From positions 289,124-353,123 of the IMG/VR virus record IMGVR_UViG_3300044640_001495: a stretch of DNA of 64,000 nucleotides. One strand, written 5' to 3'. A program made the position numbers and the translations under genes. This document shows, piece by piece, positions 24,548 through 38,649 of this stretch; positions within the stretch are counted from its first letter, which is position 1, and each line of letters opens with the position of its first letter. The notes under the pieces are model-generated. The model made no database searches, was not told where the DNA came from, and worked only from the letters and a program-made list of their open reading frames with translations.

Positions 24548-24604
24548 ATTCAGCTCCTGTTTAGTGTGTGTAAGCATTAATTATAGCGCCATTCGTCCAA
24601 TCTG

Positions 24605-24835
24605 TCAACCAACAGCTTTCAATAACCCTACAATGCCTATGGCTAATGAAATCACATTAACCATCAGTTGTGGGCGGTTCTTGACACGGAAGGCCCAGGT
24701 TAGGAACAGTACTGTTCCCACAGCGAACACAATAATATTGTAGGGATATGCCGCAGGACCCACAGCATTGAGAATGTGCCCTAGCACTATGGCTACAGCA
24801 CCCGTCCATTGTAGAATGTCATTTGTTTTGTTCAT
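24605..24835 (-). CDS. small membrane protein
   Basis: Three hydrophobic segments; ATG at 24835 lies about 7 nt from the -10 box, so probably leaderless. Confidence 0.7.
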   Translation of the reverse strand: MNKTNDILQWTGAVAIVLGHILNAVGPAAYPYNIIVFAVGTVLFLTWAFRVKNRPQLMVNVISLAIGIVGLLKAVG

Positions 24836-24881
24836 GTGTGTATTATAACACTGAACTGCCAATCTGTCAACCAAATGCCCT

Positions 24882-25268
24882 TTAGGTTCTAGGGCTTTCC
24901 TTTAGGAATTGCGCACCATGCTCTTCTGATAGTACAATGGTAAAGTCCTTGTGGAAGCGATCACTCAAGCAGGCTAGAACGGCTTCACGGTTTGCTCCTT
25001 GACATAGGAACTCCATGGTATCCAAACGGTACACATACAGTTGATCATTCACCTTCTCAACCCGGACTTCTATACGGGGCATTGCATCCTCGTGGTCTTC
25101 AGGCAGATCCTTCTGCAGATCCTGCATCATGTTGCGCATGTCTGAGTCTTTGACCTTGAGTTTGATCAGGATGTCTTTGAACATAGTGACATGGATGTGT
25201 TCGGCTACCTTGAAGCCCAAAAAGCCTCCCAAGGCCGCGCCCAACACGAAGTCTAGCCATTCCATCAT
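24882..25268 (-). CDS. hypothetical protein with N-terminal membrane anchor
   Basis: 128 aa; AGGAG RBS. Confidence 0.7.
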   Translation of the reverse strand: MMEWLDFVLGAALGGFLGFKVAEHIHVTMFKDILIKLKVKDSDMRNMMQDLQKDLPEDHEDAMPRIEVRVEKVNDQLYVYRLDTMEFLCQGANREAVLACLSDRFHKDFTIVLSEEHGAQFLKESPRT

Positions 25269-25591
25269 TTTCTCCTGGGTTTGGTCAATGCGGCTGCTTC
25301 TTTGCGCAGAGCACCGGCTTTCTTGTAGAGAACGCCGGCCTGTTCGTCAAGACTCTTTGATCGCTCAGTGGCCAACTTTCCGCCACCAAACTCACGGTCG
25401 ATATAGTATTGGATGAGATTGTTCTTGATCATGGAGATCAAGTCACCGCCATTGTCTTCTGGACAGATGAAGCGGACTGGGCAACGGCCCCAACTGCTGT
25501 GTTCCACGAACTCTGCGTAATAGCGACGATGATCTTTGTTATGTGCATCAAAGGCCACCAAGGGCCTGCAATAGTATTCTAATTTGCTCAT
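25265..25591 (-). CDS. hypothetical protein
   Basis: Start MSKLEY at 25591; TAAATA immediately upstream. Confidence 0.7.
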   Translation of the reverse strand: MSKLEYYCRPLVAFDAHNKDHRRYYAEFVEHSSWGRCPVRFICPEDNGGDLISMIKNNLIQYYIDREFGGGKLATERSKSLDEQAGVLYKKAGALRKEAAALTKPRRK

Positions 25592-25599
25592 GTGTTTAT

Positions 25600-25890
25600 T
25601 TACGCAAATTCTCGGTCTTCGATTTTGGTTAACATGTTCGCAGGTACTCGCCATGCACCCTGCGCAGTCTTGACGGTAACGAACTTGATAGCGATCTTAG
25701 TGACAACACCTGTCACGTTCCGACCTAACTTGCTAGATGTGAAGTTGACGTTATCGCCTACTCGCAAGCTGGCTTTGGTCAGTTTGGCGATAGTTGCCCG
25801 CTTCCACTTAACTGCATCGATCACTGACATCAACTCGTCGTTGGTCAAGTCACTGAACATGATCGCTTGATTGATCTGTTTGATATCCAT
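25600..25890 (-). CDS. hypothetical early protein (C-terminal SH3/KOW-like)
   Basis: LRVGDNVNF...GVVTKI...WRVPANML; AGGAG RBS and promoter. Confidence 0.7.
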   Translation of the reverse strand: MDIKQINQAIMFSDLTNDELMSVIDAVKWKRATIAKLTKASLRVGDNVNFTSSKLGRNVTGVVTKIAIKFVTVKTAQGAWRVPANMLTKIEDREFA

Positions 25891-25984
25891 TGTCTGCTCC
25901 TAATGTGTTAGTGTAAATGTATTATAACATGCTTTTGGCTAGGTGTCAACCGCCGTTGGGCAGCGGGGCCTACGCCCCTACAGG

Positions 25985-26140
25985 TTAGTCTACGTAGTAG
26001 TCAACCGCTTGCACTAGCATGTTAAGCGGACTTTCCATATCCCCAAAGCATTCTAGCTCTGCTAGTTGCTCCCCGTCACAGCTTGCCTCTAACAGCATAG
26101 CTTCTACTTCCGCTAGCTTTGCAAGTATTGCTTCTTTCAT
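25985..26140 (-). CDS. small acidic early protein (51 aa)
   Basis: Manual: MKEAILAKLAEVEAMLLEASCDGEQLAELECFGDMESPLNMLVQAVDYYVD; AAGGAG RBS, promoter at 26168. Confidence 0.75.
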   Translation of the reverse strand: MKEAILAKLAEVEAMLLEASCDGEQLAELECFGDMESPLNMLVQAVDYYVD

Positions 26141-26211
26141 TTACTGCTCCTTTGTTGTTAAGTGTTAATTATAGCACACACTGTCCAAAATGTCAAGTGT
26201 GTGCTGTAGTA

Positions 26212-26589
26212 TTACAGCTCCATGCTCGCATAGCCGTCGTCTTGCATACCCTGCTCTGTAAACATAACGTCTGTACCTAGCAGTGTGCTAATCGCATCTA
26301 CAAAGCCGCTGTCTGTATACAGTCTCCAGCTGCCCTCGTACTCTGCATCGCCGTCTACGTTATAGCACACTGTAATGTGTATGCTACTGTCGCCGTCCAA
26401 TTCGTCCCACCATTGCTCGTGTATGTGTACGCTTGTAACTGTAACTGCCTCAATCTCGCAGTCCCATATGCTGTCGCCTGCTAGTTGCACTTCTATGTTG
26501 CAGTCGTATGTTGTGCTAATGCTGTCTTCGCTAGTGTCTGTAGTTGCCAGTGTCAGCTTGTCGCTAACTTCAAATTGTGTTGCTTGCAT
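26212..26589 (-). CDS. highly acidic, proline-free early protein
   Basis: 125 aa, D/E-rich, no Pro; GGAGCGAAT RBS, promoter at 26621. Confidence 0.8.
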   Translation of the reverse strand: MQATQFEVSDKLTLATTDTSEDSISTTYDCNIEVQLAGDSIWDCEIEAVTVTSVHIHEQWWDELDGDSSIHITVCYNVDGDAEYEGSWRLYTDSGFVDAISTLLGTDVMFTEQGMQDDGYASMEL

Positions 26590-26681
26590 AGTATTCGCTC
26601 CTAATGCTGTTTAAAAATGTATTATAGCACACCTTGTCCAAAATGTCAAGTGTGTGCGCAATAACCCTATGCGCTGTAGTG

Positions 26682-26825
26682 TTATTGTATAATTGTGTCG
26701 TCTAGCGCACAAGCTAACGCATTAAATGCGTTTTGTATTGCAACATGTTCGTCTAGTTCTGCTTCTTCTAGCACTGTTTGTAACTGTAACATTAAACTGT
26801 CTAATTTGCTTTTTGTATTTTGCAT
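26682..26825 (-). CDS. small acidic early protein (47 aa)
   Basis: Manual: MQNTKSKLDSLMLQLQTVLEEAELDEHVAIQNAFNALACALDDTIIQ; AAGGA RBS, promoter at 26852. Confidence 0.7.
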   Translation of the reverse strand: MQNTKSKLDSLMLQLQTVLEEAELDEHVAIQNAFNALACALDDTIIQ

Positions 26826-26904
26826 TGTGTTTCCTTTGTTGCTATGTTGTTATTATAGCGCACTTTGTCCAAAATGTCAAGTGCGCTATGTATAACCCTA
26901 CAGT

Positions 26905-27156
26905 TTAGTCAACAAATACAATGTTTGTAGTACGCAAACTTTGTTGCGCAGAAGCCACAGTGCGTTGCACCTCGTTTTGCAAGTTGTCTGCAAGTAAGTC
27001 CCCACTAACATAGTTGCATTTTGCTTGTGTAGGGAATATATACTTAATCTCGTCCCCCACCATTTTTTTGTGTACATTAAATGCAAACTGTACTTTATAT
27101 GCTTTTAATTTTTTGTTGTAAACTAGCTTTGCGTAGGCTATGCAATTTGTAAACAT
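26905..27156 (-). CDS. hypothetical early protein
   Basis: 83 aa; AAGGA RBS, promoter at 27186. Confidence 0.75.
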   Translation of the reverse strand: MFTNCIAYAKLVYNKKLKAYKVQFAFNVHKKMVGDEIKYIFPTQAKCNYVSGDLLADNLQNEVQRTVASAQQSLRTTNIVFVD

Positions 27157-27216
27157 TGTGTGTCCTTTTGTGTGTGTAAGCTGTAATTATAACGCACAAC
27201 GTCCAAATTGTCAACC

Positions 27217-27253
27217 AAAAAAAAGCATAACCCTACACCTAGCAGGGTTATGC
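27217..27253 (-). terminator. Rho-independent terminator, overlapping an operator-like palindrome
   Basis: GCATAACCCT-N9-AGGGTTATGC stem followed by T8 on the minus strand. Confidence 0.75.
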
Positions 27254-27257
27254 CAAA

Positions 27258-27295
27258 GTTGCCTCTATACCGGGAGCGAATCGGTATTAGGCAAC
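27258..27295 (-). ncRNA. 3'-UTR hairpin displaying AUUCGCUCC (anti-RBS loop), copy 1
   Basis: GUUGCCU-A-AUACCG [AUUCGCUCC] CGGUAU-AG-AGGCAAC, spanning the stop codon and ending before the terminator. Confidence 0.6.
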
Positions 27296-27592
27296 AACAG
27301 CCGCTGTCTTCGCGACAGGGGCTTTGACCGCAGCCCGGGGGGCTGGGTTTTTCTTCTCTGCATAGGCAACAGCAGCTTGGATAGCAGCATTGCCTATGCC
27401 GAACTGGATAGACTTAAGGTGCTGTACAGCTTCTGCCTTAGTCATCTCTACTGGCAGCTCAACCAACTCAACGTCAGTGTGGCCGTTCTTTGCCAGGATC
27501 TTGATACGCATGGTATCGTTAGCGAAGCGCAATTTGGTCTTGCCTTCGAGGGTTGAAACACCTGCTACTGCAAATTTCTTATCGGTACTCAT
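27287..27592 (-). CDS. hypothetical protein with Ala/Lys/Pro-rich tail
   Basis: 101 aa; KLRFAND..RIKIL.KNGHTD core. Confidence 0.8.
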   Translation of the reverse strand: MSTDKKFAVAGVSTLEGKTKLRFANDTMRIKILAKNGHTDVELVELPVEMTKAEAVQHLKSIQFGIGNAAIQAAVAYAEKKNPAPRAAVKAPVAKTAAVVA

Positions 27593-27672
27593 TTTTAACT
27601 TCCTTCTGTGTGTGTAAAAATCATGCCAACCAATTCAGCATGTTATTAGTATAGCATCAATATTCGAATTGG

Positions 27673-27867
27673 TCAACTGTTTGGTTTACCAAATTGCGGA
27701 ACAACTTGAATACTGACGCTTTCCTTCTCGTCTAAGGCGGCGATGAACTCATCGTCAAAGACCAGATCCTGCATGTTCAAGTCGATCATGTGTTCGACTC
27801 GATCCATATCGGGTCTGCCATCGCTGGCACACTCGATTGTGAATTTAAATTCATATTTCCTTGTCAT
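27673..27867 (-). CDS. hypothetical protein
   Basis: 64 aa, coupled to the upstream ORF. Confidence 0.65.
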   Translation of the reverse strand: MTRKYEFKFTIECASDGRPDMDRVEHMIDLNMQDLVFDDEFIAALDEKESVSIQVVPQFGKPNS

Positions 27868-28478
27868 TTTGTTCCCTCATTGGCTGCAACGCCATCCTTA
27901 ATCCACTCAGTAAGCTCTTCCTCTTGCTCTGCTTCGTATTCACGAATGCTTTCTGAGATAGCAAATGCTTCGTCCAGTTCAGGATGATCACGCTCAATGT
28001 CGTCGGCACTCATGCCTTCGAGATTGATCTCTTGATCACCATGCTCATCATAGGCGCCAGCATAGGCCATACCACCTTCGTAATACATGGCGTTGACACC
28101 AAAGCCCAACTCCACCAACTTGTCATAGGCAGCGACTGGAGGGCTCCACGCTGAGTCGAACGATGTGTGTAGCATCTTACCATCAGGGTGGATATCACTC
28201 TGACCATCGCCACCTACATCCCACTTGGTGCCCCATTCACCTACGCAGAAGTCATACCAGTTGCCGTAACCATACTTCTCGCGATTCTCAGCAGTCTTGC
28301 GTTCCAATTCTTTCTGCTCGTCACCGTCACCTAACGATCCTGCAACGATCTGCAGATCCGTTGGCACCGGAATGAACTCATTGAGGAACTCTCCACGATC
28401 AAGTGCTTCTTTAGCACGAAGGATCATTGCTGGGTCTTCGTGGGTGAGTGTCAGTGTGTTGTTGCACCAATTTGGCAT
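27864..28478 (-). CDS. DUF1281/YubB-like ferredoxin-fold protein
   Basis: MPNWCNN...WYDFC...WGTKWD...FDSAWSPP motif set. Confidence 0.75.
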   Translation of the reverse strand: MPNWCNNTLTLTHEDPAMILRAKEALDRGEFLNEFIPVPTDLQIVAGSLGDGDEQKELERKTAENREKYGYGNWYDFCVGEWGTKWDVGGDGQSDIHPDGKMLHTSFDSAWSPPVAAYDKLVELGFGVNAMYYEGGMAYAGAYDEHGDQEINLEGMSADDIERDHPELDEAFAISESIREYEAEQEEELTEWIKDGVAANEGTK

Positions 28479-28487
28479 GTCGGCTCC

Positions 28488-28670
28488 TTAAAGATTAACA
28501 AATTTCCAGGGGTCTTGCGTAATCGTAGCGTCCTGGATCTCAACGCTAAGACTGAACTCAAATGTAGTTGCACGAGTAGGATACTCTTTAACCAACTCAG
28601 CAGCCAACTTAGAGAGGCTGTCATTACTCAGCACTGCAATCTCGTTAGCCAATCGTTCAATGTGTGTCAT
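28488..28670 (-). CDS. hypothetical protein
   Basis: 60-aa ORF in an operon. Confidence 0.65.
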   Translation of the reverse strand: MTHIERLANEIAVLSNDSLSKLAAELVKEYPTRATTFEFSLSVEIQDATITQDPWKFVNL

Positions 28671-28950
28671 ATTGATGATCCTTGAAAGTTGAAGTTACTG
28701 CATGAACTGCTTGCTTGCTCTTGCCACCGATGTGCCAACGATACTGGCCCATTGGGGTTTCGTATTCTTTCCAATCGTATATTGTGGCCACTGTGCCATC
28801 TTCAAATTCCAAACACCACTCCACTGTGGTCTTGTCGCCGCCGCCTTCGGGCTGGCCAAACACTTCTACCAGTTCATGGTAGTAAGCGGTTACATATCCC
28901 TGCAGGCTAGTGCCGTTTGCCTCTGTCCAATCTGTTTGTGTAAACTTCAT
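28657..28950 (-). CDS. hypothetical early protein
   Basis: GTSLQGY...KTTVEW...ATIYDWK...WHIGG; GGAGCGAA RBS. Confidence 0.75.
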   Translation of the reverse strand: MKFTQTDWTEANGTSLQGYVTAYYHELVEVFGQPEGGGDKTTVEWCLEFEDGTVATIYDWKEYETPMGQYRWHIGGKSKQAVHAVTSTFKDHQYDTH

Positions 28951-29010
28951 CTTCGCTCCTTTGTGTGTATGTGTTTATTATAGCGCCAAACTGCCAAACT
29001 GTCAACCAAT

Positions 29011-29364
29011 TTAAACAATAGCCCTACGGTGATTAGGGACATAATCACTGTAGATCTTTACAGCATGATTCTTTCTAACCCAGTCTACCAAACTCTGCGG
29101 ATCGCCGATCATCCAATCTTCTACATCCTTAAACTCAATGTCGTCCAGGGTGGTGAACATGTAGATTTCATAGGTTCGTTGACTATTGGCCTGTGCCCTC
29201 AACTTCATCATTGAAATCTGTCGACCCAACGGATTCTCAGTCTTTCTACGGCCACTGAGGATCTCAATCAACTGACCCTTTTCAAAGTTCTCAGGATGAA
29301 AGTGGGTGATGTCCTGCAGGGTTTCAAAGCCGGTGGAGTCCCACGCTGCCAAAATGTATCTCAT
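29011..29364 (-). CDS. hypothetical protein
   Basis: 117 aa, coupled to the upstream ORF. Confidence 0.7.
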   Translation of the reverse strand: MRYILAAWDSTGFETLQDITHFHPENFEKGQLIEILSGRRKTENPLGRQISMMKLRAQANSQRTYEIYMFTTLDDIEFKDVEDWMIGDPQSLVDWVRKNHAVKIYSDYVPNHRRAIV

Positions 29365-29567
29365 ACCCCAGCCCTCATAACTTCCATCAAGCGGTTCTGC
29401 AAGCGATCCACTTCTGCGTTCTCTACATAGAAGTCGGTGGTTGGATCCCAGTACTGGCCTGCCTTTGGATCGTAATACAAGACCCGATCAACGAACCAAA
29501 ACGGTCCTTCCAGCCCCTTGCGTGGTTGCCACTTTTCGTCTCTCTTGCCCAGGGTGATGAATGCCAT
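29361..29567 (-). CDS. hypothetical early protein
   Basis: GLEGPF...YYDPKAGQYWDPTTDFY; own promoter and RBS. Confidence 0.75.
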   Translation of the reverse strand: MAFITLGKRDEKWQPRKGLEGPFWFVDRVLYYDPKAGQYWDPTTDFYVENAEVDRLQNRLMEVMRAGV

Positions 29568-29631
29568 TTCGCGCTCCTTTGTGTTTCAGTATATGTATAT
29601 TATACGATCAAAAGCCCAAACTGTCAACCAA

Positions 29632-29940
29632 TTACCAGGCAATCTCTTTAGAAGCGTAACGGATGTGACCTTCGTAGTTCAACTGGCTCTGCTCGAACTC
29701 TGTGAGAGCATCATCAGCCACGATAGACCAATCAATAATGGTCTCGCGGAAGGCATCATTGTCCTGCTCAATCTGACCACGCACACCCATCACAGTCTCC
29801 GTGACCTTGTTGATGTTGATGTTCTTGACCACGTAGTCTGAACCGCCCTTGGCTTTCCAGTACTGTGGGCACTCACCAACTCCGTCCCAATCGTGGGCAC
29901 CGTAGTTCTCGTAGACCTGTGTAGTGATTAAAAGTTTCAA
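29632..29940 (-). CDS. hypothetical early protein
   Basis: TQVYENYGAHDWDG.GECPQYWKAKGG; TTG start after GGAGCGAA. Confidence 0.75.
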   Translation of the reverse strand: MKLLITTQVYENYGAHDWDGVGECPQYWKAKGGSDYVVKNININKVTETVMGVRGQIEQDNDAFRETIIDWSIVADDALTEFEQSQLNYEGHIRYASKEIAW

Positions 29941-29997
29941 GTTTCGCTCCTTGTTTGCTAGTGTATGTGTATATTATAGCAGGGATTGCTCAAAGTG

Positions 29998-30234
29998 TCA
30001 ACCAATTTCAGTGTTGCAGAATTGCCACATCTTTAATTGCTCTCCACGCAGGCCCATTAGGACGCCTTCGTAGTCCCTGTATGAACAGAAGGCCCACTTT
30101 CGGTCTGGGCGATACACATAGAAATCATAGTCCCGCTCAGTGTTGTGCTGAGTGCAGATCCGTTTGGCTGTCGAAGCCAATTTGTAATACTTCTGCATAT
30201 GACCCGACTTCTCTTCGTATACTATCCAACCCAT
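29998..30234 (-). CDS. hypothetical protein
   Basis: 78 aa, TAATG-coupled. Confidence 0.65.
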   Translation of the reverse strand: MGWIVYEEKSGHMQKYYKLASTAKRICTQHNTERDYDFYVYRPDRKWAFCSYRDYEGVLMGLRGEQLKMWQFCNTEIG

Positions 30235-30500
30235 TAACCGTAGTCCTTTTTGCCGCCGTGAGTTTCATTCCAATCGTAGCCTGCGAGGTACTCCGCAATG
30301 CTGTCTGCATCTGTGACCTCAACCCGTGGCCCCGAGTCGCCACCAACTCCACCGTGGTGAGGGTCTATCTGTCGACCGTAGTATGAATCTGATGACCCAC
30401 GATCATAGAGACTACCGTGGCGCTCACGAACAAATTGGGGTCCACGCAGAGCACGGATCAACTGTTTCTGTTCGTCTTCTGGCAGGATGTGTAGGTACAT
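30234..30500 (-). CDS. hypothetical protein
   Basis: HGSLYDRGSSDSYYGR...EYLAGY motif. Confidence 0.7.
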   Translation of the reverse strand: MYLHILPEDEQKQLIRALRGPQFVRERHGSLYDRGSSDSYYGRQIDPHHGGVGGDSGPRVEVTDADSIAEYLAGYDWNETHGGKKDYG

Positions 30501-30501
30501 G

Positions 30502-30681
30502 TCAACTGTTCATGGATACGAAGGGACTGTAGTCTTCAGGAGCGTCTTGTACGCCCATGTCTTGTATGTAGCCAAGCACCTGCTCGACAGGGCAATCCAA
30601 CAGGTCTGCAATCATCTTGGCACTGTGGCCTTCGATATACAGTTGCTCAACATCATATGCTAGGTCTGCCATCTTGCTCAT
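30502..30681 (-). CDS. small HTH-like protein (59 aa)
   Basis: Manual: MSKMADLAYDVEQLYIEGHSAKMIADLLDCPVEQVLGYIQDMG... Confidence 0.6.
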   Translation of the reverse strand: MSKMADLAYDVEQLYIEGHSAKMIADLLDCPVEQVLGYIQDMGVQDAPEDYSPFVSMNS

Positions 30682-30800
30682 TTGACATCCCTCACAACTT
30701 CTTGCACCTTGTTCACGCCCTTGTCGGCGATCTGTGCAATGCCTGTGAAGCCAACAGTGGCAACAATAATACCAGCGATAAATGCTGCTAAGTGACTCAT
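30678..30800 (-). CDS. small membrane peptide (40 aa)
   Basis: Manual: MSHLAAFIAGIIVATVGFTGIAQIADKGVNKVQEVVRDVK; promoter at 30836. Confidence 0.6.
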   Translation of the reverse strand: MSHLAAFIAGIIVATVGFTGIAQIADKGVNKVQEVVRDVK

Positions 30801-30941
30801 CATATCTATCAACCTTTCTGTGTGTGTAAGTCTATATTATACAATCAATCTACCAAACCGTCAACCCCTAGATTACATGCACACGTAAGCAGCGGGGCCT
30901 ACTAGCAGTGTGGCTTTTTTGCCACACTGCCGGCACTCCAA

Positions 30942-32156
30942 TTAGGCAGTCTCTTTCTCGTAGATAACAGTCTGACCAAAGGGTGCTTCTGCTTCTGTAT
31001 TGCCTTTGACAATAAAGATTGTGTCGCAGTAGTCCTCGTCACCCCAACTACCGCAGGGGTAGCCGTCTGTGAACATAATGAACTTCTTAGGACGAATACC
31101 ATTCTCTTCCATAAACTCCCAGTTCACAGCAAAGTCAGTACCGCCACCGCCCTGTGGCTCATACTCAAATAGCTCTTCACTATTGTCCTGCGAGAACTCT
31201 TTGTGGTTATAGATCTCTGTGTCAAAGCACCACAGGTTAATCTTAAAGTCCTCATACTGATCAACAATGCCCTTGACCTCTGACAGGAATACAGTTGCAT
31301 CCTCTTGTCCAATGCTACCTGACATATCAATTGAAATACCAATGTCAATTGTAGTTGCTTCTTTCATGCCCGGCAGTATGGCACCTGAGTGCATACTCTT
31401 ACGGTTAGGACGAGTAAAGGAATAGTCGTTGCGGATAATGCTCTGTATCTCTTGACGCACAAGATCACGCCAGCTAATCTTAGGCTCAGTCATGTCCTTG
31501 ATCAAACGCTGGATGCCTGCGGGCACTTTGCCTGCACCTGCTGCCGCGGCACTCTGCACCATGGCTTCTTTGATCTCATCGCGGATCTTCTGTGCTTCTT
31601 CTTTAGTCATGCCAGGCATACCCTTGCCCTGCTTGTCTCCATCACCCTCTTTGCCCGGTGCATTGCCGTCTTCGTTAATGTGCTCGTCCAACAGGTCACC
31701 AAGTTGCTGAAGCAGTTGTGGCATAGAGATCTTCTCTGCCTTCTCGTATAGCTCGTCGTAGATCTCTTCCCAGGCTTTGCCGCGATACTTGGCATCGTAG
31801 CAGATCTTGACTTCAGTGATCTTCTCACCAATGCGTTCGTCTACAAGGATCTGATTGACAGCGTAGTCTTGTGCAATGTTAGACAGCTGGCGATCGCGTG
31901 AACCTACACGACCAAAGTGGTCAAACACACAATGGCAAATCTCGTGTCCGAATAGGAACTCTAGTTTCTTGACTGAGAGCTTCTCAACGAACTTAGTATT
32001 GTAATAGAAATTACGGCCATTAGTTGCCGCAGTAGGGCACCATTCGTCTGCTTGAATCAGTTGCATACGAGTTGCCATGTTGCCAAAGAATGGTGCCTTA
32101 AGCAACAGTCCCACACGGGCTGTGGTTAGTTTATCGATAATCGGATCAAATGCCAT
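30942..32156 (-). CDS. metallopeptidase-like plus VWA domain protein (DUF2201-type)
   Basis: TAATNG, HEICH, DYAVN; MIDAS DMSGS, GGGGTDF, FTDGY. Confidence 0.88.
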   Translation of the reverse strand: MAFDPIIDKLTTARVGLLLKAPFFGNMATRMQLIQADEWCPTAATNGRNFYYNTKFVEKLSVKKLEFLFGHEICHCVFDHFGRVGSRDRQLSNIAQDYAVNQILVDERIGEKITEVKICYDAKYRGKAWEEIYDELYEKAEKISMPQLLQQLGDLLDEHINEDGNAPGKEGDGDKQGKGMPGMTKEEAQKIRDEIKEAMVQSAAAAGAGKVPAGIQRLIKDMTEPKISWRDLVRQEIQSIIRNDYSFTRPNRKSMHSGAILPGMKEATTIDIGISIDMSGSIGQEDATVFLSEVKGIVDQYEDFKINLWCFDTEIYNHKEFSQDNSEELFEYEPQGGGGTDFAVNWEFMEENGIRPKKFIMFTDGYPCGSWGDEDYCDTIFIVKGNTEAEAPFGQTVIYEKETA

Positions 32157-32212
32157 TAGTCGCTCTCCTTAGTATGTGTATATTATAGCATCTATTTACA
32201 CACCTGTCAACC

Positions 32213-32261
32213 AAAAAAGTGGGCGGGCAAGCCCTGAGAAGCCTCCCGCCCTTGCAATGGG
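32213..32261 (-). terminator. Rho-independent terminator
   Basis: GGGCGGG...CCCGCCC stem followed by a T-run after the AAA gene. Confidence 0.65.
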
Positions 32262-32268
32262 CGAGGTC

Positions 32269-33354
32269 TTAATTCTCCATTGCACTCAAAACATACTTGC
32301 CAAAACGCTTGTGGAACTCGTCAAAGCTCTTCATCTTTGTAGCGTCAAAGGGCAAGTTGTAATTTGTCAAGCCCGTCTTAGCACCCATCACCACCAACTC
32401 TGTTGGGAAGTTATCCATCATGTAGCGGAAGAAGCAGTCTGCCATAGCATCCCAACCTTTAGACTTCTTCTCTGCTTGATCCTTAAGTTCATAGCACAGG
32501 CTCACAGTCAAAGAGTACATGGCTGACACTTCCTTAATCTGCAGGTCCTTGACCTTGCCTTCCAAGATGTCCAACGCCTTAGGCAAGCGACCTGCAATCT
32601 TACGGTGAGCCATAAACTTAATAGCCAGGCCATCACCTACGGCACCCGCAACCAAATTGTGCATGGTGTCAACGTCGCAGTCCTCGTCCTTGAGCAAGTC
32701 GCTCACAAACACCCACGAGCGTGGAGTTGCAAAGGCCTTGCTGGGCGACTTAGGATCGAAGTCGTATAAGTCCTGCTTGGCGAAACCCACATAACCCAAC
32801 ACCTCAGGGTGAACGTCATTCATAACAGCCCACTCTTGGAAGTCATCAAAATCTACCTTTGCTTCCAAGTGAATGAAACGGTTAGCCAGCGGAGCAGGCA
32901 TACGATATGTCACGCCACGATCGCCTTCTCTGTTACCAGCGGCAACCACGTCAACACCCTTAGGCAATTCGTAAGTACCAACACGACGGTTAAGGATCAA
33001 CTGATAGGCCGCGGCCTGTACCGCTGGAGGAGCACTGTTCAATTCATCTAAGAAGATGATCGCAGTTGACTCTGGGTTGGTAGGAAGCTCTGCAGGGGGA
33101 GCCCAAACCATTGTGCCCTTGTCTGCATTGTAATAGGGGATACCCTTAATGTCTGTAGGCTCCCACAGGGCCAGGCGAACGTCGATAACTTCGCGACCAG
33201 CGTCTTCGCCGATCTGCTTAACGATGTCACTCTTACCAATACCTGGAGGGCCCCAAAGGAACACAGGGCGGCGTTTCTTGATTGCAAAACGAATTGATTT
33301 CTTTGCGTTCTTGGGACCAACTTGTCGAACGCTAATGTCTGTTGACTTTGCCAT
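32269..33354 (-). CDS. MoxR-like AAA+ ATPase
   Basis: GPPGIGKS, FLDELN, AAGNR, PLANRF, TPRSW. Confidence 0.9.
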   Translation of the reverse strand: MAKSTDISVRQVGPKNAKKSIRFAIKKRRPVFLWGPPGIGKSDIVKQIGEDAGREVIDVRLALWEPTDIKGIPYYNADKGTMVWAPPAELPTNPESTAIIFLDELNSAPPAVQAAAYQLILNRRVGTYELPKGVDVVAAGNREGDRGVTYRMPAPLANRFIHLEAKVDFDDFQEWAVMNDVHPEVLGYVGFAKQDLYDFDPKSPSKAFATPRSWVFVSDLLKDEDCDVDTMHNLVAGAVGDGLAIKFMAHRKIAGRLPKALDILEGKVKDLQIKEVSAMYSLTVSLCYELKDQAEKKSKGWDAMADCFFRYMMDNFPTELVVMGAKTGLTNYNLPFDATKMKSFDEFHKRFGKYVLSAMEN

Positions 33355-33427
33355 AATAAGACCTCTTTCTTTCTCAGTTAAAGTTGCTTTCTCAGTGTTA
33401 ATAGTATAACACCGAACAGCTCAGTTG

Positions 33428-34063
33428 TCAAGCTCTTTTTACGAAGTTTAATTGTGTTGTATTATCGCTACGAACACTTTTAATCTTTGCTTTGATAGTT
33501 AACTTCTGCCCTGCTTCTAAGTTACTATTATACCAGAAATCCACGAAACTGTCAACCAGTTTAGCAGTAACCCTGAACTTGTCATAGTCTTTGCTGTAGT
33601 AGCACTTGACCACCTCGATCTCGCCCTGGATCTTGTCACCCACAGCGCCCTGCAATTGAGTAGAAGCACGGACTTCGCGAGCCAACTCGTTACGGATTTG
33701 ATCGCGCAGCATCACACCAGGCAAGCAGCTTACGATGGCAAACTCCAACATGTTACGGCCAGTGAACTCATCCATCTGTGCAATGCGGAGTGCCTGCTGT
33801 TCGAAGTCGTTGATCTTGCCCGAGATCTGTTTCAGCAAGAAGCCATTGAAGTAGTTGCGAACCGCACGACCCTTCTCAACGTCCTCTGCTGTGGCTTCGG
33901 TGAATGCACCCTCGCGGAGCCATTGCTTGACCATTAGCTTGTTGGCCTGGGTGACTCGCTTCTGGCAGTCGTTCTCCAGCACGTAGACATCTTCTTTGAA
34001 GTAGCCTCCGTTGATACGATCTGCTGCTACCGCCAATCCCCAAACTTGATCTGCTGTAAACAT
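33428..34063 (-). CDS. hypothetical early protein (C-terminal OB-fold-like)
   Basis: 211 aa; GGAGCGAA RBS and promoter. Confidence 0.75.
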   Translation of the reverse strand: MFTADQVWGLAVAADRINGGYFKEDVYVLENDCQKRVTQANKLMVKQWLREGAFTEATAEDVEKGRAVRNYFNGFLLKQISGKINDFEQQALRIAQMDEFTGRNMLEFAIVSCLPGVMLRDQIRNELAREVRASTQLQGAVGDKIQGEIEVVKCYYSKDYDKFRVTAKLVDSFVDFWYNSNLEAGQKLTIKAKIKSVRSDNTTQLNFVKRA

Positions 34064-34140
34064 TGTTCGCTCCGTTGTTTCAGTATATATCTATTATAGC
34101 ATCAGTCGCCCAAAGTGTCAACCAACTGGAGTGCCGGTCA

Positions 34141-34171
34141 AAGAAAAAAGGTGTTGTATTTCTACAACACC
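34141..34171 (-). terminator. Rho-independent terminator
   Basis: GGTGTTGTA-GAAA-TACAACACC followed by TTTTTTCTT. Confidence 0.8.
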
Positions 34172-34172
34172 C

Positions 34173-34212
34173 TCAAAAGACGCCCCGGGAGCGAATCGGC
34201 TTGTCTATTTGA
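34173..34212 (-). ncRNA. 3'-UTR hairpin displaying AUUCGCUCC (anti-RBS loop), copy 2
   Basis: UCAAA.AGAC...CCG [AUUCGCUCC] CGG...GUCU.UUUGA between stop codon and terminator; shares the 15-mer CCGATTCGCTCCCGG with copy 1. Confidence 0.6.
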
Positions 34213-34220
34213 AACCCTAA

Positions 34221-34493
34221 TTAAAGAGTGATGCCCATTGCTTGAGCTTTGTAGCCTAGAGCAACGATCTCACGTGATGGCTTGCCCATCACATATTCAG
34301 TTACCTGAACACCGTTGCCTGCTGTACGGCTGTTGGTATAAACAGCGTAGCCTGCTTGACGAATGCGGCTGGCTTCTGCTGCCAGGTTGCCAACACCTAG
34401 GTCATGCTTGGCCTGTGCTGGAGTAAGTGCTTTACCATTGTAAAGTGCTGTGAAGACTTTGAAAGTCTTGGTTTTTGGATTGAATCTCTTCAT
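34221..34493 (-). CDS. winged helix-turn-helix DNA-binding protein
   Basis: L.NGKALTPAQA...GVGNLAAEASRIRQAGYAVYT...TEY pattern; start MKRFN at 34493. Confidence 0.7.
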   Translation of the reverse strand: MKRFNPKTKTFKVFTALYNGKALTPAQAKHDLGVGNLAAEASRIRQAGYAVYTNSRTAGNGVQVTEYVMGKPSREIVALGYKAQAMGITL

Positions 34494-34583
34494 TTTAAGT
34501 TTCCTTTGTTGTGGCTGTTTCCTAACAGCGTCATACAAGTATACAGACATCCATGATCAAGAGCAATGGTCAATTTCGCCAAA

Positions 34584-34781
34584 TCACTTCTTCACAGACA
34601 CTTTGGTTTGGAAGAAAGCACTCATTATCAGAACAGCTAGCCAAGTCTGCCAAGTGTAAGGAATAGCTAATACAGGGAACAGGATGTTCATTGCCCAAAT
34701 TACCAGCCAAGGGCCCAACAGAACCAATGCTACAATCAACACAGCAAATCCTACCACCAACATGATTTTATTCATTTTCAT
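34584..34781 (-). CDS. small membrane protein
   Basis: 65-aa hydrophobic ORF. Confidence 0.7.
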   Translation of the reverse strand: MKMNKIMLVVGFAVLIVALVLLGPWLVIWAMNILFPVLAIPYTWQTWLAVLIMSAFFQTKVSVKK

Positions 34782-34998
34782 ACTCCGCTATCTCTTGTAG
34801 ACGTTTAACTTCGGCCAGCTCTTTCTCAATCTCTTTGTTCTTGCGTTTGTTTCCTACGCTAGACCCACGATTGTAGACTAGCCATACATGATCTTCGCAA
34901 TAGACCTTGCCAGGCCACAAGCTCTTGCATCCGCACATAGTGAACGGAGACTCCTTCTGCTCCGGACCTATGTACTGGCACCCTGCAATATCGCTCAC
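34768..34998 (-). CDS. Cys/His zinc-binding protein resembling the GcrA C-terminal domain
   Basis: CQYIG......FTMCG........YCEDH...VY. Confidence 0.5.
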   Translation of the reverse strand: MSDIAGCQYIGPEQKESPFTMCGCKSLWPGKVYCEDHVWLVYNRGSSVGNKRKNKEIEKELAEVKRLQEIAEYENE

Positions 34999-36050
34999 GC
35001 AACACCTCGCTTCATAACAGTGACCTCTGCCATTGCTTCCCAGTTGTCAGCAAACGCCTTGCGCAATTGTGCAACCTTCAACACCGTACGCAGGCTCAGC
35101 TCGCGTAGTTTAGCACGGTTGTTAGACACAAAGTCCACAACATCAATCTTGGCCACATCGCTCAGCTCGTATTCGTCCAGCATGCCGTCTGCAACGATCT
35201 GCTTGATACGCAGGACCTTCTCACGATCTGTATCCATCTGCAGATCAATGTAGTGGCAACGGCTCTCAAGAGCGGCAAGGTGATCCTGTAGCTTCTTAGA
35301 GCGTACATTCTCAAACTTGATGTTGGTGATAAAGATCGCACCAGCCTTGAACTCGAAGCGATCTGGGATGCCTTCGCTTCGCAGGATACGGCTGTCAGTG
35401 TTCCAGCTGATAGTACGCTTCTTAGAACTGTCCAAAGCCGCCTTAAGAATGTTCAGGCTCAAGTCGTCCAGCAACACTGAGTCGCAGTCATCAAACACAA
35501 TAACATTCTTCTCACTTGAGAACTCGTAGAGCTTAGAATACAAGCCAATGGCACTCATAGCACCTTTGACAATCTCGTAGCGTGGCTTGCGCTCGCCTAA
35601 GGTATTGAACAAGTCGTCCTTAGTCAACACTTCTTCAACACCAAACGATTTGCCTACACCTGGGGGACCTGTCACAATCATAGCACGTACATCGCCTGCT
35701 TTCACAGCCTTAGTCATGTCTGTAAGTACTTGGAAGCGAGCACGAGTCTTTTCGATCAGCTCGTCATCTGTGATATGTGCTACAGCCGAGTCAGCCACCT
35801 TGAGCTGTACCAAACTGTTCTCTCCTACAGGAGCCTCGTCAATGTGCGCGACCACGCGGTATGCATTAATGCCAGAGACCTTGACGCGGATCTTCTTGTA
35901 GGGGTTGCGACCACCTTCAATCTCATCGCCTGCAAGGCAAGTAATTGCCTCGCCGTCAAAGTCCTTGACCATTTGCAAGCGGATGCCTGGGGTGATCAAA
36001 TTCTTACGGGCACCGTAAGCACCTTCTGTAATCTCAACTAGTGTAGCCAT
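34995..36050 (-). CDS. AAA+ ATPase
   Basis: GPPGVGKS, VFDDCD, FITN, ALESR; start MATLVE at 36050 after GGAGCGAA. Confidence 0.85.
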   Translation of the reverse strand: MATLVEITEGAYGARKNLITPGIRLQMVKDFDGEAITCLAGDEIEGGRNPYKKIRVKVSGINAYRVVAHIDEAPVGENSLVQLKVADSAVAHITDDELIEKTRARFQVLTDMTKAVKAGDVRAMIVTGPPGVGKSFGVEEVLTKDDLFNTLGERKPRYEIVKGAMSAIGLYSKLYEFSSEKNVIVFDDCDSVLLDDLSLNILKAALDSSKKRTISWNTDSRILRSEGIPDRFEFKAGAIFITNIKFENVRSKKLQDHLAALESRCHYIDLQMDTDREKVLRIKQIVADGMLDEYELSDVAKIDVVDFVSNNRAKLRELSLRTVLKVAQLRKAFADNWEAMAEVTVMKRGVA

Positions 36051-36131
36051 TTTTCGCTCCTGTGTGTTAGTGTATGTGTCTATTATAGCGCACTCTAGGG
36101 GTTTCGTCAACCCCTAGTTGTGCTGTGGCAT

Positions 36132-36599
36132 TTAAGCCACACATGCTGCTTCTTCAACCAATGCCTGCATCAAGGGCTTGAAGTCTTCGCTGTGATCTGC
36201 TACAAACCAAACAGCTTGACCGTGTACTGAGCGCAGGATGTACTCGTATTCCTCATACTGGTGGTTCAACAGATAGTCCTCATAGCTAGCGAACTTCTTG
36301 GCACTCGTACCTGTCTCGCCACGATCACGTCCGTAGAACGTAGTCATGTCGCCGTAGAGTTTGTCGTAGGCCTCGCCGTCCATTGGAACTTCAAGTCGGC
36401 TAAAGGCATGCTTGGTACCTACTGTGGGCCTAAGTGAGCTGATGTCACCCAAGTCAATCAAGTCACGCAAGATGAAAGGGTTTGAATAGTGCTCTTGCAG
36501 CATCTGACCGTTGTGTGCCAAATAGCCGTCCCAGTGGCAGTATACCTGCTCAACTGTACCGTCTGCATATTCTAATGCAATTGTGCTTCGTGTTGCCAT
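36132..36599 (-). CDS. conserved phage hypothetical protein
   Basis: MATRSTI...VYCHWDGY motif; GGAGCGA RBS. Confidence 0.8.
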   Translation of the reverse strand: MATRSTIALEYADGTVEQVYCHWDGYLAHNGQMLQEHYSNPFILRDLIDLGDISSLRPTVGTKHAFSRLEVPMDGEAYDKLYGDMTTFYGRDRGETGTSAKKFASYEDYLLNHQYEEYEYILRSVHGQAVWFVADHSEDFKPLMQALVEEAACVA

Positions 36600-36657
36600 T
36601 GTATCGCTCCAATATTGTTAAGTTAAGTGTCTATTATAGCAGCTTTCGCTCAACCCG

Positions 36658-36888
36658 TCAACCTAGTGTGGCAATAACCCTACCCACTGTAGGGTCAAAC
36701 TTCAAGAACACCTTGGTGCTGTCCGTGCCGCCCTTTACAGGAAAGGTACACATGTAACAGAACTCGCCCCCATTTGTGATCCCTAGGAACTTGCGGCCCG
36801 TGAATTGGTAGTCCTCATTGTCTAGGGCCTTGGTCAATGCTGCCGCTGTAAACGTTGTCAGCGTAGTCAGTTGTTCAGCTGTGATCAT
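36658..36888 (-). CDS. hypothetical protein
   Basis: 76 aa; AGGAG RBS. Confidence 0.7.
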   Translation of the reverse strand: MITAEQLTTLTTFTAAALTKALDNEDYQFTGRKFLGITNGGEFCYMCTFPVKGGTDSTKVFLKFDPTVGRVIATLG

Positions 36889-37262
36889 GCTGCAACTCCT
36901 TCTGCATCAAGTTCCCAGCTGATGTCCTGGAACTTCTTGTATAAGCGGTAGACATCCCGTTTGGCTTCTACCAACGCTTCAGCAATGAGGTCTTCGGCAG
37001 TCCCGTCAGTAAGGACTTCGCGGGCGTCTTCGTATAAGCATCCGCCCAAGAACTGTGAACTGAGTTCGATGTTCTCAACCATAACTCGGACACGCAGCAT
37101 GAACCAGTCAAGATTCCCGTGTTCGATGTTGTGGTTGATCTCTGCGATATCAAACTGGGTGTCATCAAAACAGTCTTTGGGGTCCAGGTCTTCATATGAT
37201 TTATCCACAATAATATCAAAGCCGTTGCGCTCGTATACAGCCAATTCGTCGTAGTGTCTCAT
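36885..37262 (-). CDS. acidic hypothetical protein
   Basis: 125 aa; GGAG RBS. Confidence 0.7.
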   Translation of the reverse strand: MRHYDELAVYERNGFDIIVDKSYEDLDPKDCFDDTQFDIAEINHNIEHGNLDWFMLRVRVMVENIELSSQFLGGCLYEDAREVLTDGTAEDLIAEALVEAKRDVYRLYKKFQDISWELDAEGVAA

Positions 37263-37529
37263 TTAGATCTCCGTTTCGTATTCGTAGAATGTAACTGTAG
37301 GGTCGTACTTTTTCAGCTGACGAGCCGCTGTCATCAACTCTTTGTAGCGACGGTTGACCTCTGCTCTAGGCAGTTCACCATCGCATGTCAAGTTCTCTGG
37401 GCTTAAGGCCGCATCAATCATGTCTGCTACAGCCTGACGGTCTGCGGCACTGTTAAGACTGTACTGGGGACCCTTGAAGAATGAGTTCCAGTGGTTCTTG
37501 TCTTTCAAAAATTTCTCTAATGCTTTCAT
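37263..37529 (-). CDS. hypothetical protein
   Basis: LSPENLTCDGEL motif; AGGAG RBS. Confidence 0.75.
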   Translation of the reverse strand: MKALEKFLKDKNHWNSFFKGPQYSLNSAADRQAVADMIDAALSPENLTCDGELPRAEVNRRYKELMTAARQLKKYDPTVTFYEYETEI

Positions 37530-37539
37530 CTTGTGCTCC

Positions 37540-37713
37540 TTAAGCGGGTGTTAACAGTTTACGGAAGTCGTTCATTACAACTCGGAAGGCCTGCTGTTCA
37601 ACAGGCTCAAATTCATCCAGGTTGTCCTGCATGTACTGCAGAGTCTCTAACAGTCCTGAGCCATCAGCTTCTTTGCGTTGGCTAATGTATACCATAGCTT
37701 GTGTGAATGTCAT
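37540..37713 (-). CDS. small hypothetical early protein (57 aa)
   Basis: Manual: MTFTQAMVYISQRKEADGSGLLETLQYMQDNLDEFEPVEQQAFRVVMNDFRKLLTPA; GGAGCGAA RBS and promoter. Confidence 0.7.
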   Translation of the reverse strand: MTFTQAMVYISQRKEADGSGLLETLQYMQDNLDEFEPVEQQAFRVVMNDFRKLLTPA

Positions 37714-37771
37714 CTTTCGCTCCTTTGTGTGTGTATGTGTCTATTATAGCGCCATTAGCCCAATCAGTCAA

Positions 37772-38110
37772 CTAGTCCCCACGAACATCCGTATTCAGTG
37801 TAGGGTTAATAGCACGGCGTAGTTCAACTTCGCGCTTGTGGGCCTGAGCCTTGCCACGAACCACTTCGTGTACGTATACTTCTATCTCGCTCTTGTCGCT
37901 GAGAGTGCGCAGGGCATGACACAAGGCCCAATCCTTAGCTTCTTTCTTAGCACGATAGAAGTGTTTAGCGGCACGTGCCAAAACTGACTTATTAATAGTG
38001 GTCTCAGTCTTGGCTGTGACTCCTATGTAGTTGCCCCCAGCAACACGCAACTCATATATGATATGATTGCGGTCGGTGCGCTTTTTACGAATGGTGTTTG
38101 TCTGTGTCAT
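37772..38110 (-). CDS. GIY-YIG-like nuclease
   Basis: HIIYEL......YIGVT...R...H...AHKRE...PTLN; start MTQTN at 38110. Confidence 0.65.
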   Translation of the reverse strand: MTQTNTIRKKRTDRNHIIYELRVAGGNYIGVTAKTETTINKSVLARAAKHFYRAKKEAKDWALCHALRTLSDKSEIEVYVHEVVRGKAQAHKREVELRRAINPTLNTDVRGD

Positions 38111-38357
38111 GTGTCTATTATACTGCATTTTGGCTGTTTCGTCAACCAAAATAAAAAGACACTAGACTGCGTAGGGTTTCTCGTTCTAGATGATCTCCTT
38201 TAAGGTTACCCACAGGATATTCACAGTGTGATGTGGATATCCAAACTGTAGCCAAAATGCCACACTTTGGGCTGTGTCGCGGCACTCTCATTAGCTGCTG
38301 GCTGCTGCTGTAGGGCTGGTGTACGCTGCGCAGCATTCAGGATTCTGCTGCTGTAGA

Positions 38358-38442: not shown

Positions 38443-38468
38443 CAGTCTCGATGCTGCTGCAACGTTGT

Positions 38469-38545: not shown

Positions 38546-38564
38546 CTGCTGTACTATTAATGTT

Positions 38565-38642
<78 letters not shown>

Positions 38643-38649
38643 GATAATC

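What the first reader, a model, noticed from the sequence alone, without database searches (positions are those of the whole stretch)
24623..38179. Palindromic operator TAACCCTAC-N5-GTAGGGTTA centred near -60 of early promoters, kept even inside coding sequence
Seen: copies at 24623, 26662, 26893 (half), 27228, 29019, 36675, 37786 and 38157 have centres 23-26 bp upstream of the outer edge of the -35 box; a further copy at 24875 is about one helical turn closer. Several lie within the 3' ends of upstream genes (24623, 29019, 36675, 37786), so position appears selected despite coding. Established: class I activators such as CRP act from about -61.5. Inference: a dimeric phage or host regulator controls a subset of cassettes; the HTH ORFs at 34221 and 30502 are candidates.
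Basis: partly seen in the sequence, partly recalled or inferred. Interest (0 to 1): 0.65.

Follow-up and report, generated by a model that had tools for sequence, protein, structure and literature searches.

The report
Conserved stem-loop of phage promoter cassettes
A 23-base palindrome just upstream of some early promoters of an uncultured freshwater giant phage is real and under selection, but it fits the stem-loop part of the known 'PeSL' promoter/stem-loop cassettes of T4-type phages better than a CRP-style activator site, and no protein that binds it could be identified.

Summary
The window is the last 64 kb of a 353-kb lake-water jumbo phage of the T4 superfamily. On the minus strand, w21151-39032 holds 25 near-identical sigma70 promoters with a common leader, in front of small genes. 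Six of them carry GTAGGGTTA (at most 1 mismatch) 12-14 nt upstream of the -35 box, against 0.04 expected. The same palindrome occurs in at least 118 uncultured viral contigs but only at chance level in 185,579 bacterial genomes. Its arms are invariant, its centre is free and its spacing is fixed. Inside one conserved gene both arms are frozen at synonymous sites. The gene order around it is scrambled between relatives. Stem-loops also sit at other promoter positions, as described for PeSLs. One copy (27228) is a textbook terminator. Related phages hold unrelated hairpins in the same slot. I therefore read it as the stem-loop module of PeSL-type cassettes (confidence 0.5). An operator for an unknown phage protein remains a serious rival (0.27). 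A host regulator is unlikely, and both HTH candidates also occur in relatives that lack the palindrome.

The parts
21151..39032 (-). Early-gene cluster: 25 near-identical sigma70 promoters (GGTTGACA-N17-TATAAT plus an ACACATACACACAAAGGAGCGAA-like leader) in front of small ORFs
27217..27254 (-). Best copy: palindrome 27228-27250 (1 mismatch, a G.U in the sense RNA), stem extended to 13 pairs (27224-27254) and followed by a T-run (27217-27223). It has the look of an intrinsic terminator and lies after the stop of ORF 27287-27592, 13 nt before the -35 box of promoter 27214
36675..36697 (-). Palindrome copy (1 mismatch, -12.7 kcal/mol) inside the last codons (G-R-V-I-A) of ORF 36658-36888, 13 nt before the -35 box of promoter 36661
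26662..26684 (-). Palindrome copy (2 mismatches, weak hairpin). The stop codon of ORF 26682-26825 is its first three letters; it lies 12 nt before the -35 box of promoter 26649
24623..24645 (-). Imperfect copy (3 mismatches, -3.2 kcal/mol) that codes for ..L-A-I-G-I-V-G-L.. of the membrane-protein ORF 24605-24874. Both arms are frozen at synonymous sites in relatives; it lies 14 nt before the -35 box of promoter 24608
26893..26901 (-). Promoter-proximal half-site only, directly after the stop of ORF 26905-27156. Two relatives have the full palindrome at this junction and two others keep only the half
29019..29041 (-). Weak copy (4 mismatches; proximal arm GTAGGGCTA) in the last codons of ORF 29011-29364, 13 nt before the -35 box of promoter 29005
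37786..37808 (-). Marginal copy: only the distal arm is conserved (4 mismatches, 13.5 bits), inside ORF 37772-38149
38154..38182 (-). Marginal copy (5 mismatches, 16 bits) followed by a T-rich tail, before promoter 38145
23657..23685 (-).
50820..50859 (-). Variant with the same arm core (AAACCCTAGCT / AGCTAGGGTTT) but a 12-nt centre that holds the -10 box of the promoter of ORF 49419-50795
24605..24874 (-). Small membrane-protein gene whose stop codon is the TGA inside the TTGACA of the next promoter (369 relatives in IMG/VR)
34221..34550 (-).
30502..30681 (-).

Best explanation
The palindrome is the stem-loop module of PeSL-type (promoter-early stem-loop) cassettes in the hyperplastic early region of an uncultured freshwater T4-superfamily jumbo phage. 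Each cassette consists of the end of the upstream gene, a stem-loop, a near-consensus sigma70 promoter, a Shine-Dalgarno leader and a small gene. In its complete form the element is an 11-bp stem with a 5-nt loop (about -14 kcal/mol). It marks the end of the upstream transcription unit immediately before the next early promoter. Inferred, not shown: it attenuates or terminates read-through, or protects the upstream mRNA's 3' end, and it forms the constant linker at which cassettes are exchanged between phages. Its primary sequence, not only its pairing, is under selection, so some clade-specific factor probably reads it. That step is inferred and the factor is unknown.
For: 1. Architecture. 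There are 25 near-identical promoters with leaders in front of small ORFs. The stop codons of upstream genes lie in or next to the element.
2. T4-superfamily identity. The genome has gp46/47-, gp55- and gp44-like genes, and its DnaB-like helicase is 50% identical to that of PA5oct.
3. Shuffling. The small early genes occur in scrambled order in relatives, while the promoter/linker stays constant.
4. Stem-loop positions. Stem-loops also occur around the -35 box, inside the spacer, over the -10 box (w50820) and just downstream of promoters. These are the PeSL subclasses described for RB49/phi1, where one stem-loop acted as a terminator in a reporter (PMC2839356). Lineage-specific stem consensus sequences are known for PeSLs (PMC4122927).
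5. The slot matters more than the sequence. After homologues of ORF 27287-27592, most relatives have unrelated GC-rich hairpins where the window has the 27228 copy with its T-run. In several relatives the AAA-operon promoter is preceded by this palindrome, but in the window it is preceded by an unrelated short hairpin. Relative G010 uses a different palindrome upstream of its promoters.
6. Variable centres. Copies with the same arm core have centres of about 10-12 nt that hold the -35 or -10 box.
7. Open loop. Complementarity within the 5-nt centre is depleted, as expected for a loop that must stay open.
8. No bacterial regulon.
Against: 1. The arms are invariant while the centre is free, and the spacing is 5 nt in 209 of 218 copies. 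A purely structural hairpin needs neither.
2. The formal covariation test is null: score 0.159 against 0.155 in shuffles. The stem never extends beyond +-2.
3. G.U pairs in the sense RNA are not favoured over A.C (11 against 31).
4. Most copies lack a U-tract. T falls to 0.1-0.3 from the third base after the arm, so they are poor intrinsic terminators.
5. In the window only 2 of the 8 copies folded give a stable hairpin.
6. The copy frozen at synonymous sites inside the membrane-protein gene is an imperfect palindrome of only -3 kcal/mol, and the constraint runs on to the -35 box.
7. Some contigs place the palindrome in tandem with a canonical terminator, so its job is not simply termination.
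Confidence: 0.5

Rival explanations
1. The palindrome is an operator: a phage-encoded dimeric DNA-binding protein binds the duplex, centred near -60, and tunes a subset of early promoters. It could activate through the alpha subunit's C-terminal domain, or dampen by occluding UP-element contacts. Where the site lies downstream of a promoter, the protein would act as a roadblock.
For: The arms are conserved, the centre is free and the spacing is a strict 5 nt. Covariation is not above chance and the helix does not extend. Synonymous sites are frozen over both arms of an imperfect, weakly folding copy, and the constraint runs on to the -35 box. The same 9-10 letters are read in two frames by two gene families at the same distance from the -35 box. 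The proximal half-site is retained alone at one junction in three phages. The commonest gap of 12-15 nt puts the centre at about -60. A winged-helix early gene is present in 30 motif-bearing loci and in 4 of 4 near-complete genomes that carry the motif.
Against: The position varies: gaps of 0, 4-5 and 24-59 nt occur, as do copies downstream of promoters. Copies with about 10-12-nt centres cannot fit a rigid dimer. Orthologous slots are filled by unrelated hairpins or by another palindrome family. The promoters are already at consensus, so activation is not obviously needed. Both HTH candidates occur in relatives that lack the palindrome, and the winged helix there has an identical recognition helix. 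No cognate protein was identified.
Confidence: 0.27
2. The palindrome is a recognition site for a recombinase or nuclease that moves the promoter-gene cassettes. The arms would be the binding sites and the centre the exchange point, which would explain half-sites at some junctions.
For: Cassette order is scrambled between relatives. At the 26893 junction two relatives have the full palindrome, while the window and two other relatives keep only the half that adjoins the promoter. The PeSL authors themselves speculated about a stem-loop-binding recombination protein (PMC2839356). The element has a defined length with inverted arms.
Against: The centres differ between nearly all copies, which is unfavourable for tyrosine or serine recombinase exchange. 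No recombinase was found next to the sites. The joints between promoters in the RNA-run contigs are short-sided and may be assembly artefacts.
Confidence: 0.1
3. There is no function of its own: the motif is shared only through common descent of duplicated cassettes or through protein-coding constraint.
For: Several window copies lie in coding sequence. The weak copies (29019, 37786, 38157) look like decaying relics.
Against: Synonymous positions are frozen only under the arms. Two reading frames are used. There are at least 118 perfect copies with nearly all-different centres in diverse contigs, against roughly one expected by chance (my own estimate from collection size).
Confidence: 0.05
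4. The palindrome is the binding site of a host global regulator (CRP-like).
For: The position near -60 resembles class I sites.
Against: There are 11 perfect copies in 185,579 species genomes (596 Gb), about the chance number. One of them is a phage fragment and five lie in Tissierellia/Tissierellaceae genomes. No host regulon is visible.
Confidence: 0.03

Closest known systems
PeSLs (promoter-early stem-loops) of T4-type phages RB49/phi1, PST/T4 and nt-1/KVP40 (Arbiol 2010, PMC2839356; Comeau 2014, PMC4122927)
   Same: Both have a near-consensus sigma70 early promoter with a Shine-Dalgarno leader in front of small ORFans, and a stem-loop beside or within the promoter at several alternative positions. 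In both, upstream stop codons lie in the element, the stem consensus is lineage-specific, the elements concentrate in a plastic early region, and gene order is shuffled between relatives.
   Different: The stem here has a much more specific and longer consensus (11-bp arms, fixed 5-nt loop). It is shared by more than 100 uncultured freshwater contigs with different promoter subtypes. It is kept inside coding sequence with frozen synonymous sites, and most copies lack a U-tract. The host phage is a 353-kb PA5oct-like jumbo phage rather than a classical T4-like. Terminator activity and minicircles were not tested.
Class I activator sites (CRP centred at -61.5)
   Same: A palindrome of about 22-23 bp whose commonest centre lies about 60 bp upstream of the start site.
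   Different: In relatives the position is not held to helical phase. There is no host regulon, the promoters are already at consensus, and no binding protein is known.
Bidirectional intrinsic terminators
   Same: An A-rich flank, a stem with a GC core, a short loop and a T-rich flank, placed after stop codons. The 27228 copy is canonical.
   Different: The usual tail is only TTATT, the stem sequence is conserved rather than free, and some copies lie inside translated sequence.
Promoters and terminators of Pseudomonas phage PA5oct (Lood 2020, PMC7318152)
   Same: This is the nearest cultured relative by the DnaB-like helicase (50% aa). Its authors report 32 TTGAC/TATAATA promoters and 36 terminators with conserved stem-loops.
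   Different: There is no DNA similarity to the window region. Its supplementary tables were not compared, so it is unknown whether its stems resemble this one.

Membership tests
PeSL cassettes | Strong sigma70-like early promoter repeated many times | tested here: met
   25 promoters with 11-12 of 12 consensus matches and a 17-bp spacer in 18 kb, all on the gene strand
PeSL cassettes | Stem-loop adjacent to or overlapping the promoter, at one of several positions | tested here: met
   Stem-loops occur upstream of the -35 box (27228, 36675 and others), around the -35 box (26196, 26649, 26880, 36110), in the spacer (22230, 22682) and over the -10 box (50820). Not every promoter has one.
PeSL cassettes | Shine-Dalgarno sequence and start codon of a small gene at the 3' end, with the upstream stop codon at the 5' end | tested here: met
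PeSL cassettes | Located in a plastic region, with gene insertions, deletions or shuffling between relatives | tested here: met
   Homologous small genes are in scrambled order in L090, L078, L017, L043, L068 and G016-G020. No very close pair was available to map single events; the nearest contigs are 100% identical.
PeSL cassettes | Host phage belongs to the T4 group | tested here: inconclusive
   gp46/47-, gp55- and gp44-like genes are present, but the nearest cultured phage is the distant jumbo phage PA5oct.
PeSL cassettes | The stem-loop terminates or attenuates transcription | not testable with these tools
   Only Logan contigs of RNA runs were available, and they break at the promoter repeats. 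One copy has terminator features; most lack a U-tract.
PeSL cassettes | Minicircle formation by recombination between flanking PeSLs | not testable with these tools
   Joints between promoter repeats are seen in RNA-run contigs but have short sides.
Class I activator operator | Fixed, helically phased distance to the promoter | tested here: not met
   The gap is 12-14 nt in the window, but 0, 4-5, 12-15 and 24-59 nt, or downstream of the promoter, in other phages.
Class I activator operator | A cognate dimeric DNA-binding protein that co-occurs with the sites | tested here: not met
   The winged-helix and 59-aa candidates also occur in palindrome-free relatives.
Class I activator operator | Half-site sequence conserved, with a free central spacer of fixed length | tested here: met
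Intrinsic terminator | Stable GC-rich hairpin followed by a U-tract | tested here: inconclusive
   Met by 27228 (13 pairs plus T-run). The consensus element folds at about -13.7 kcal/mol, but its tail is only UUAUU.
Structured RNA under pairing selection | Compensatory changes above chance | tested here: not met
   The shuffle control shows no excess. My cruder count (8 of 26 double changes complementary) is explained by tolerant positions shared by both arms.

The most novel reading that the evidence does not exclude
The palindrome is a sequence-specific recognition site, on duplex DNA or as a hairpin, for a still unidentified factor shared by a large clade of uncultured freshwater T4-superfamily phages. 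It would be a clade-wide 'boundary code' that both controls early transcription units and marks the ends of mobile gene cassettes, strong enough to freeze synonymous sites inside genes.
Probability: 0.3. Interest if true: 0.65.

Novelty: new member of a known kind. Interest (0 to 1): 0.42.

Why it matters
PeSLs are the proposed vehicles by which T4-type phages swap small host-takeover genes. So far they are known from a few cultured phage pairs. This case extends them to a 353-kb freshwater jumbo phage and to more than a hundred uncultured contigs. It also shows that one stem sequence is kept with near-perfect fidelity, even at synonymous sites of overlapping genes. This bears on an open question raised by the original authors: whether the stem-loop is only a terminator, or also a site read by a protein. 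In practice, the element and its promoter mark early-gene cassette boundaries in metagenomic phage contigs and offer compact, strong promoter/insulator parts.

Tried and rejected
- Covariation. The formal shuffle test on 73 bystander variants was null. Flank and loop pairing tests showed no stem extension.
- G.U against A.C asymmetry relative to the promoter direction did not favour a sense-strand RNA hairpin.
- RNA evidence.
- Flanking-gene orientation around the copies is nearly always tandem, which fits both main readings.
- Cultured phages. There is no DNA similarity, and no homologue of the winged-helix ORF in 50,697 records.
- Rfam finds only three tRNAs.
- The literal motif in the literature gives only telomere-type primers.
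- The 204-aa ORF 27864-28478, common near the motif, resembles only a DUF1281_C cluster.
- The first-stage copy at 24875 is rejected as a family member.
- The large protein searches were not used. No alternative genetic code was needed.

Full report
**Context**

The window is the last 64 kb of a single 353,123-bp viral record with 41% GC. The record recurs at 92-96% word share in many lake-water metagenomes. Its DnaB-like helicase is 50% identical to that of Pseudomonas jumbo phage PA5oct. The genome encodes gp46/47-, gp55- and gp44-like proteins, so it belongs to the wider T4 superfamily. Between w21151 and w39032 all genes run on the minus strand. In this stretch, 25 promoters match TTGACA-17-TATAAT at 11-12 of 12 positions. 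They share flanking letters and an ACACATACACACAAAGGAGCGAA-like leader, each in front of small ORFs.

**Check of the observation**

Read in the sense of transcription, the motif is TAACCCTAC-N5-GTAGGGTTA, with GTAGGGTTA next to the promoter.

- Four full copies have up to 3 mismatches, against 0.03 expected.
- Six of the seven matches in the whole genome (up to 4 mismatches) lie in this region.
- Seven promoters have the proximal arm (at most 1 mismatch) ending 12-15 nt before the -35 box, against 0.04 expected.
- A covariance model separates four solid copies (27228, 36675, 26662, 24623) from marginal ones (38157, 29019, 37786 and a new one at 23657). It rejects 24875.
- Only 27228 and 36675 fold stably.

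**Distribution outside this genome**

The perfect palindrome occurs in at least 118 IMG/VR stretches. I estimate the chance expectation at about one. In 185,579 bacterial and archaeal species genomes there are only 11 copies, about the chance number, and one of those is a fragment of this phage clade. The arms usually extend to AATAACCCTAC / GTAGGGTTATT. The centre is almost always different from copy to copy, and the spacing is 5 nt in 209 of 218 copies. Of the 231 fetched loci, 147 share proteins with this genome. Complete 146-174-kb genomes of the clade hold 2-9 copies each.

**Position relative to promoters**

Of 98 non-redundant perfect copies, 74 have a sigma70-like promoter pointing away from them within 60 nt. 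The gaps are as follows.

| Gap to the -35 box | Copies | Note |
|---|---|---|
| 12-15 nt | 34 | commonest class |
| 4-5 nt | 11 | |
| 0 nt | 1 | |
| 24-59 nt | 28 | most (23, gaps 35-57) with a conserved motif in between; a few with a hairpin instead |
| promoter points toward the copy | about 20 | palindrome 11 nt after the -10 box; where examined, often facing the end of a convergent gene |

The 13-nt class differs from the 4-nt class by about 9 extra letters that pair with the promoter spacer. In other words, a second stem-loop encloses the -35 box. This variability does not suit a phased class I activator.

**Evidence for nucleotide-level selection**

A protein-based, motif-blind sample of the membrane-protein family of ORF 24605-24874 gave 52 distinct C-terminal tails. 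In 21 of these, the stop codon lies in the -35 box and the tail reads V-G-L. There, the codons under the two arms are 88-100% invariant (TCA TTA GCC ATA and GTA GGG TTA TAC AAA). Other codons average about 0.55, and the 5-6 letters between the arms vary freely. A sister group of 19 tails has the same promoter arrangement but lacks the motif. In the family of ORF 36658-36888 the same letters encode G/D-R-V-I-A in another frame.

**Hairpin or protein site?**

For pairing:
- the 27228 copy has 13 pairs and a T-run;
- complementarity inside the centre is depleted;
- some copies have the same arm core around about 10-12-nt centres.

Against a purely structural role:
- the shuffle control shows no covariation;
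- the stem never extends beyond +-2;
- G.U pairs are not favoured in the sense RNA;
- the usual tail is only TTATT, followed by A-rich sequence;
- the copy frozen inside the membrane-protein gene folds at only -3 kcal/mol.

Together these point to sequence-specific reading of an element that can form a hairpin. The data do not settle whether it is read as DNA or as RNA.

**Why PeSL**

- The small early genes are in scrambled order in relatives, while the promoter/linker stays constant.
- After homologues of ORF 27287-27592, most relatives carry unrelated GC-rich hairpins where the window has the 27228 copy.
- The promoter of the AAA operon is preceded by this palindrome in L063, L150 and L157, but by an unrelated short hairpin in the window.
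- Relative G010 uses a different palindrome upstream of several early promoters.
- Stem-loops also enclose the -35 box, lie in the spacer, or cover the -10 box of other promoters here.
- These features match the published description of PeSLs. That description includes five positional subclasses, upstream stop codons within the element, lineage-specific stem consensus sequences, a demonstrated terminator effect for one stem-loop, and the authors' own speculation that a protein might bind the stem.

**Candidate regulators**

ORF 34221 is a winged-helix protein (PF14090). Its model has pLDDT 83, and its best structural neighbours are PadR/MarR/ArsR-type regulators at weak E-values. It has homologues in 30 motif-bearing loci and in 4 of 4 near-complete genomes that carry the motif, and none in cultured phages. 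However, contig G010 encodes a copy that is about 80% identical and has the same recognition helix, yet it holds no palindrome (up to 2 mismatches) in 130 kb that include many early promoters. ORF 30502 looks like a minimal HTH by eye, has no family hit, and also occurs in palindrome-free contigs. These contigs are incomplete, so this weakens both candidates but does not exclude them.

**Verdict**

The finding is a real, selected element. The best filing is as a new member of the PeSL kind (confidence 0.5). An operator for an unidentified phage protein is the main rival (0.27), and a cassette-recombination site is a minor one (0.1). A host regulator is unlikely. The unusual part is the fidelity of the arm sequence across a large uncultured clade, including at synonymous sites. 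That keeps the more novel reading open.

Noticed in passing
window 26168-26210, 26621-26662, 26852-26890, 36082-36120, 38117-38160, 30836-30875; also 22202-22230 and 22654-22682: Inverted repeats whose arms differ from promoter to promoter enclose the -35 box or lie inside the spacer. Six of 25 promoters have at least 6 contiguous pairs, against 7% for mismatched upstream/spacer pairs. Relatives show the same feature with other arm sequences, so here pairing rather than sequence seems to be kept. This matches other PeSL subclasses.
   Followed up: partly
window 50820-50859: A palindrome with the same arm core but a 12-nt centre covers the -10 box and start site of the promoter of the 458-aa ORF 49419-50795 (no family hit). 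The layout is repressor-like.
   Followed up: no
window 25960-25970, 30889-30899, 39051-39061, 39258-39268, 39523-39533, 39690-39700 (minus strand): A second repeated word, GGCCCCGCTGC, occurs six times against 0.44 expected. Three copies lie just upstream of early promoters. Three lie in an apparently non-coding stretch of about 700 bp (39040-39780) that also repeats a TATAC-rich segment, at the head of the early cluster.
   Followed up: partly
window 24605-24607 and 36658-36660; relatives L090, L043, L068: The stop codon of two small genes is the TGA inside the TTGACA of the next promoter. Homologues in relatives read on through the -35 box (as Q-L-T) and stop in the spacer. Gene ends and promoter cores therefore overlap routinely here.
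   Followed up: partly
L326 (G010:1-20000) near 350, 2551, 14929 and 17583; L327 near 12405: A related jumbo-phage contig lacks the TAACCCTAC palindrome but has a different AT-rich palindrome (AAAGTAATACT..AGTACTACTTT type) upstream of several early promoters. The same type sits next to TAACCCTAC copies in L036, L071 and L172.
   Followed up: partly
L119, L120, L153, L161, L163, L174, L221 and others: In contigs of the T4-size lineage, a conserved motif of about 20 nt (CCnTTTAAAATCAAYRACTTAC) lies between the palindrome and the sigma70 promoter. It is possibly a second promoter type.
   Followed up: no
L123, L140, L142, L146, L149, L185, L189, L217, L220, L223, L229: A strong, itself palindromic promoter points straight into the palindrome, which begins 11 nt after the -10 box. 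In most of these contigs further hairpins follow, and in several the end of a convergent gene. This may be a small hairpin RNA or a multi-terminator buffer.
   Followed up: partly
L318 (5.9-kb contig binned in a Fluviibacter MAG): This contig is a fragment of the same phage clade, with eight homologous ORFs including the winged-helix gene. It is a weak hint at a betaproteobacterial host, or simply a binning error.
   Followed up: partly
window 38358-38642: [quoted passage not shown]
   Followed up: no
window 30942-33354: A MoxR-like AAA ATPase (32269-33354) lies next to a DUF2201 metallopeptidase/VWA protein (30942-32156). The two are syntenic with the winged-helix gene in relatives, unlike the shuffled small genes around them.
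   Followed up: no
window 24000-29900 in RNA runs X19-X22: Metatranscriptome contigs join distant promoter repeats (for example 26649 to 27162, and 24549 to 28955). These could be cassette-deletion variants in the lake population or assembly artefacts; the sides are short.
   Followed up: no
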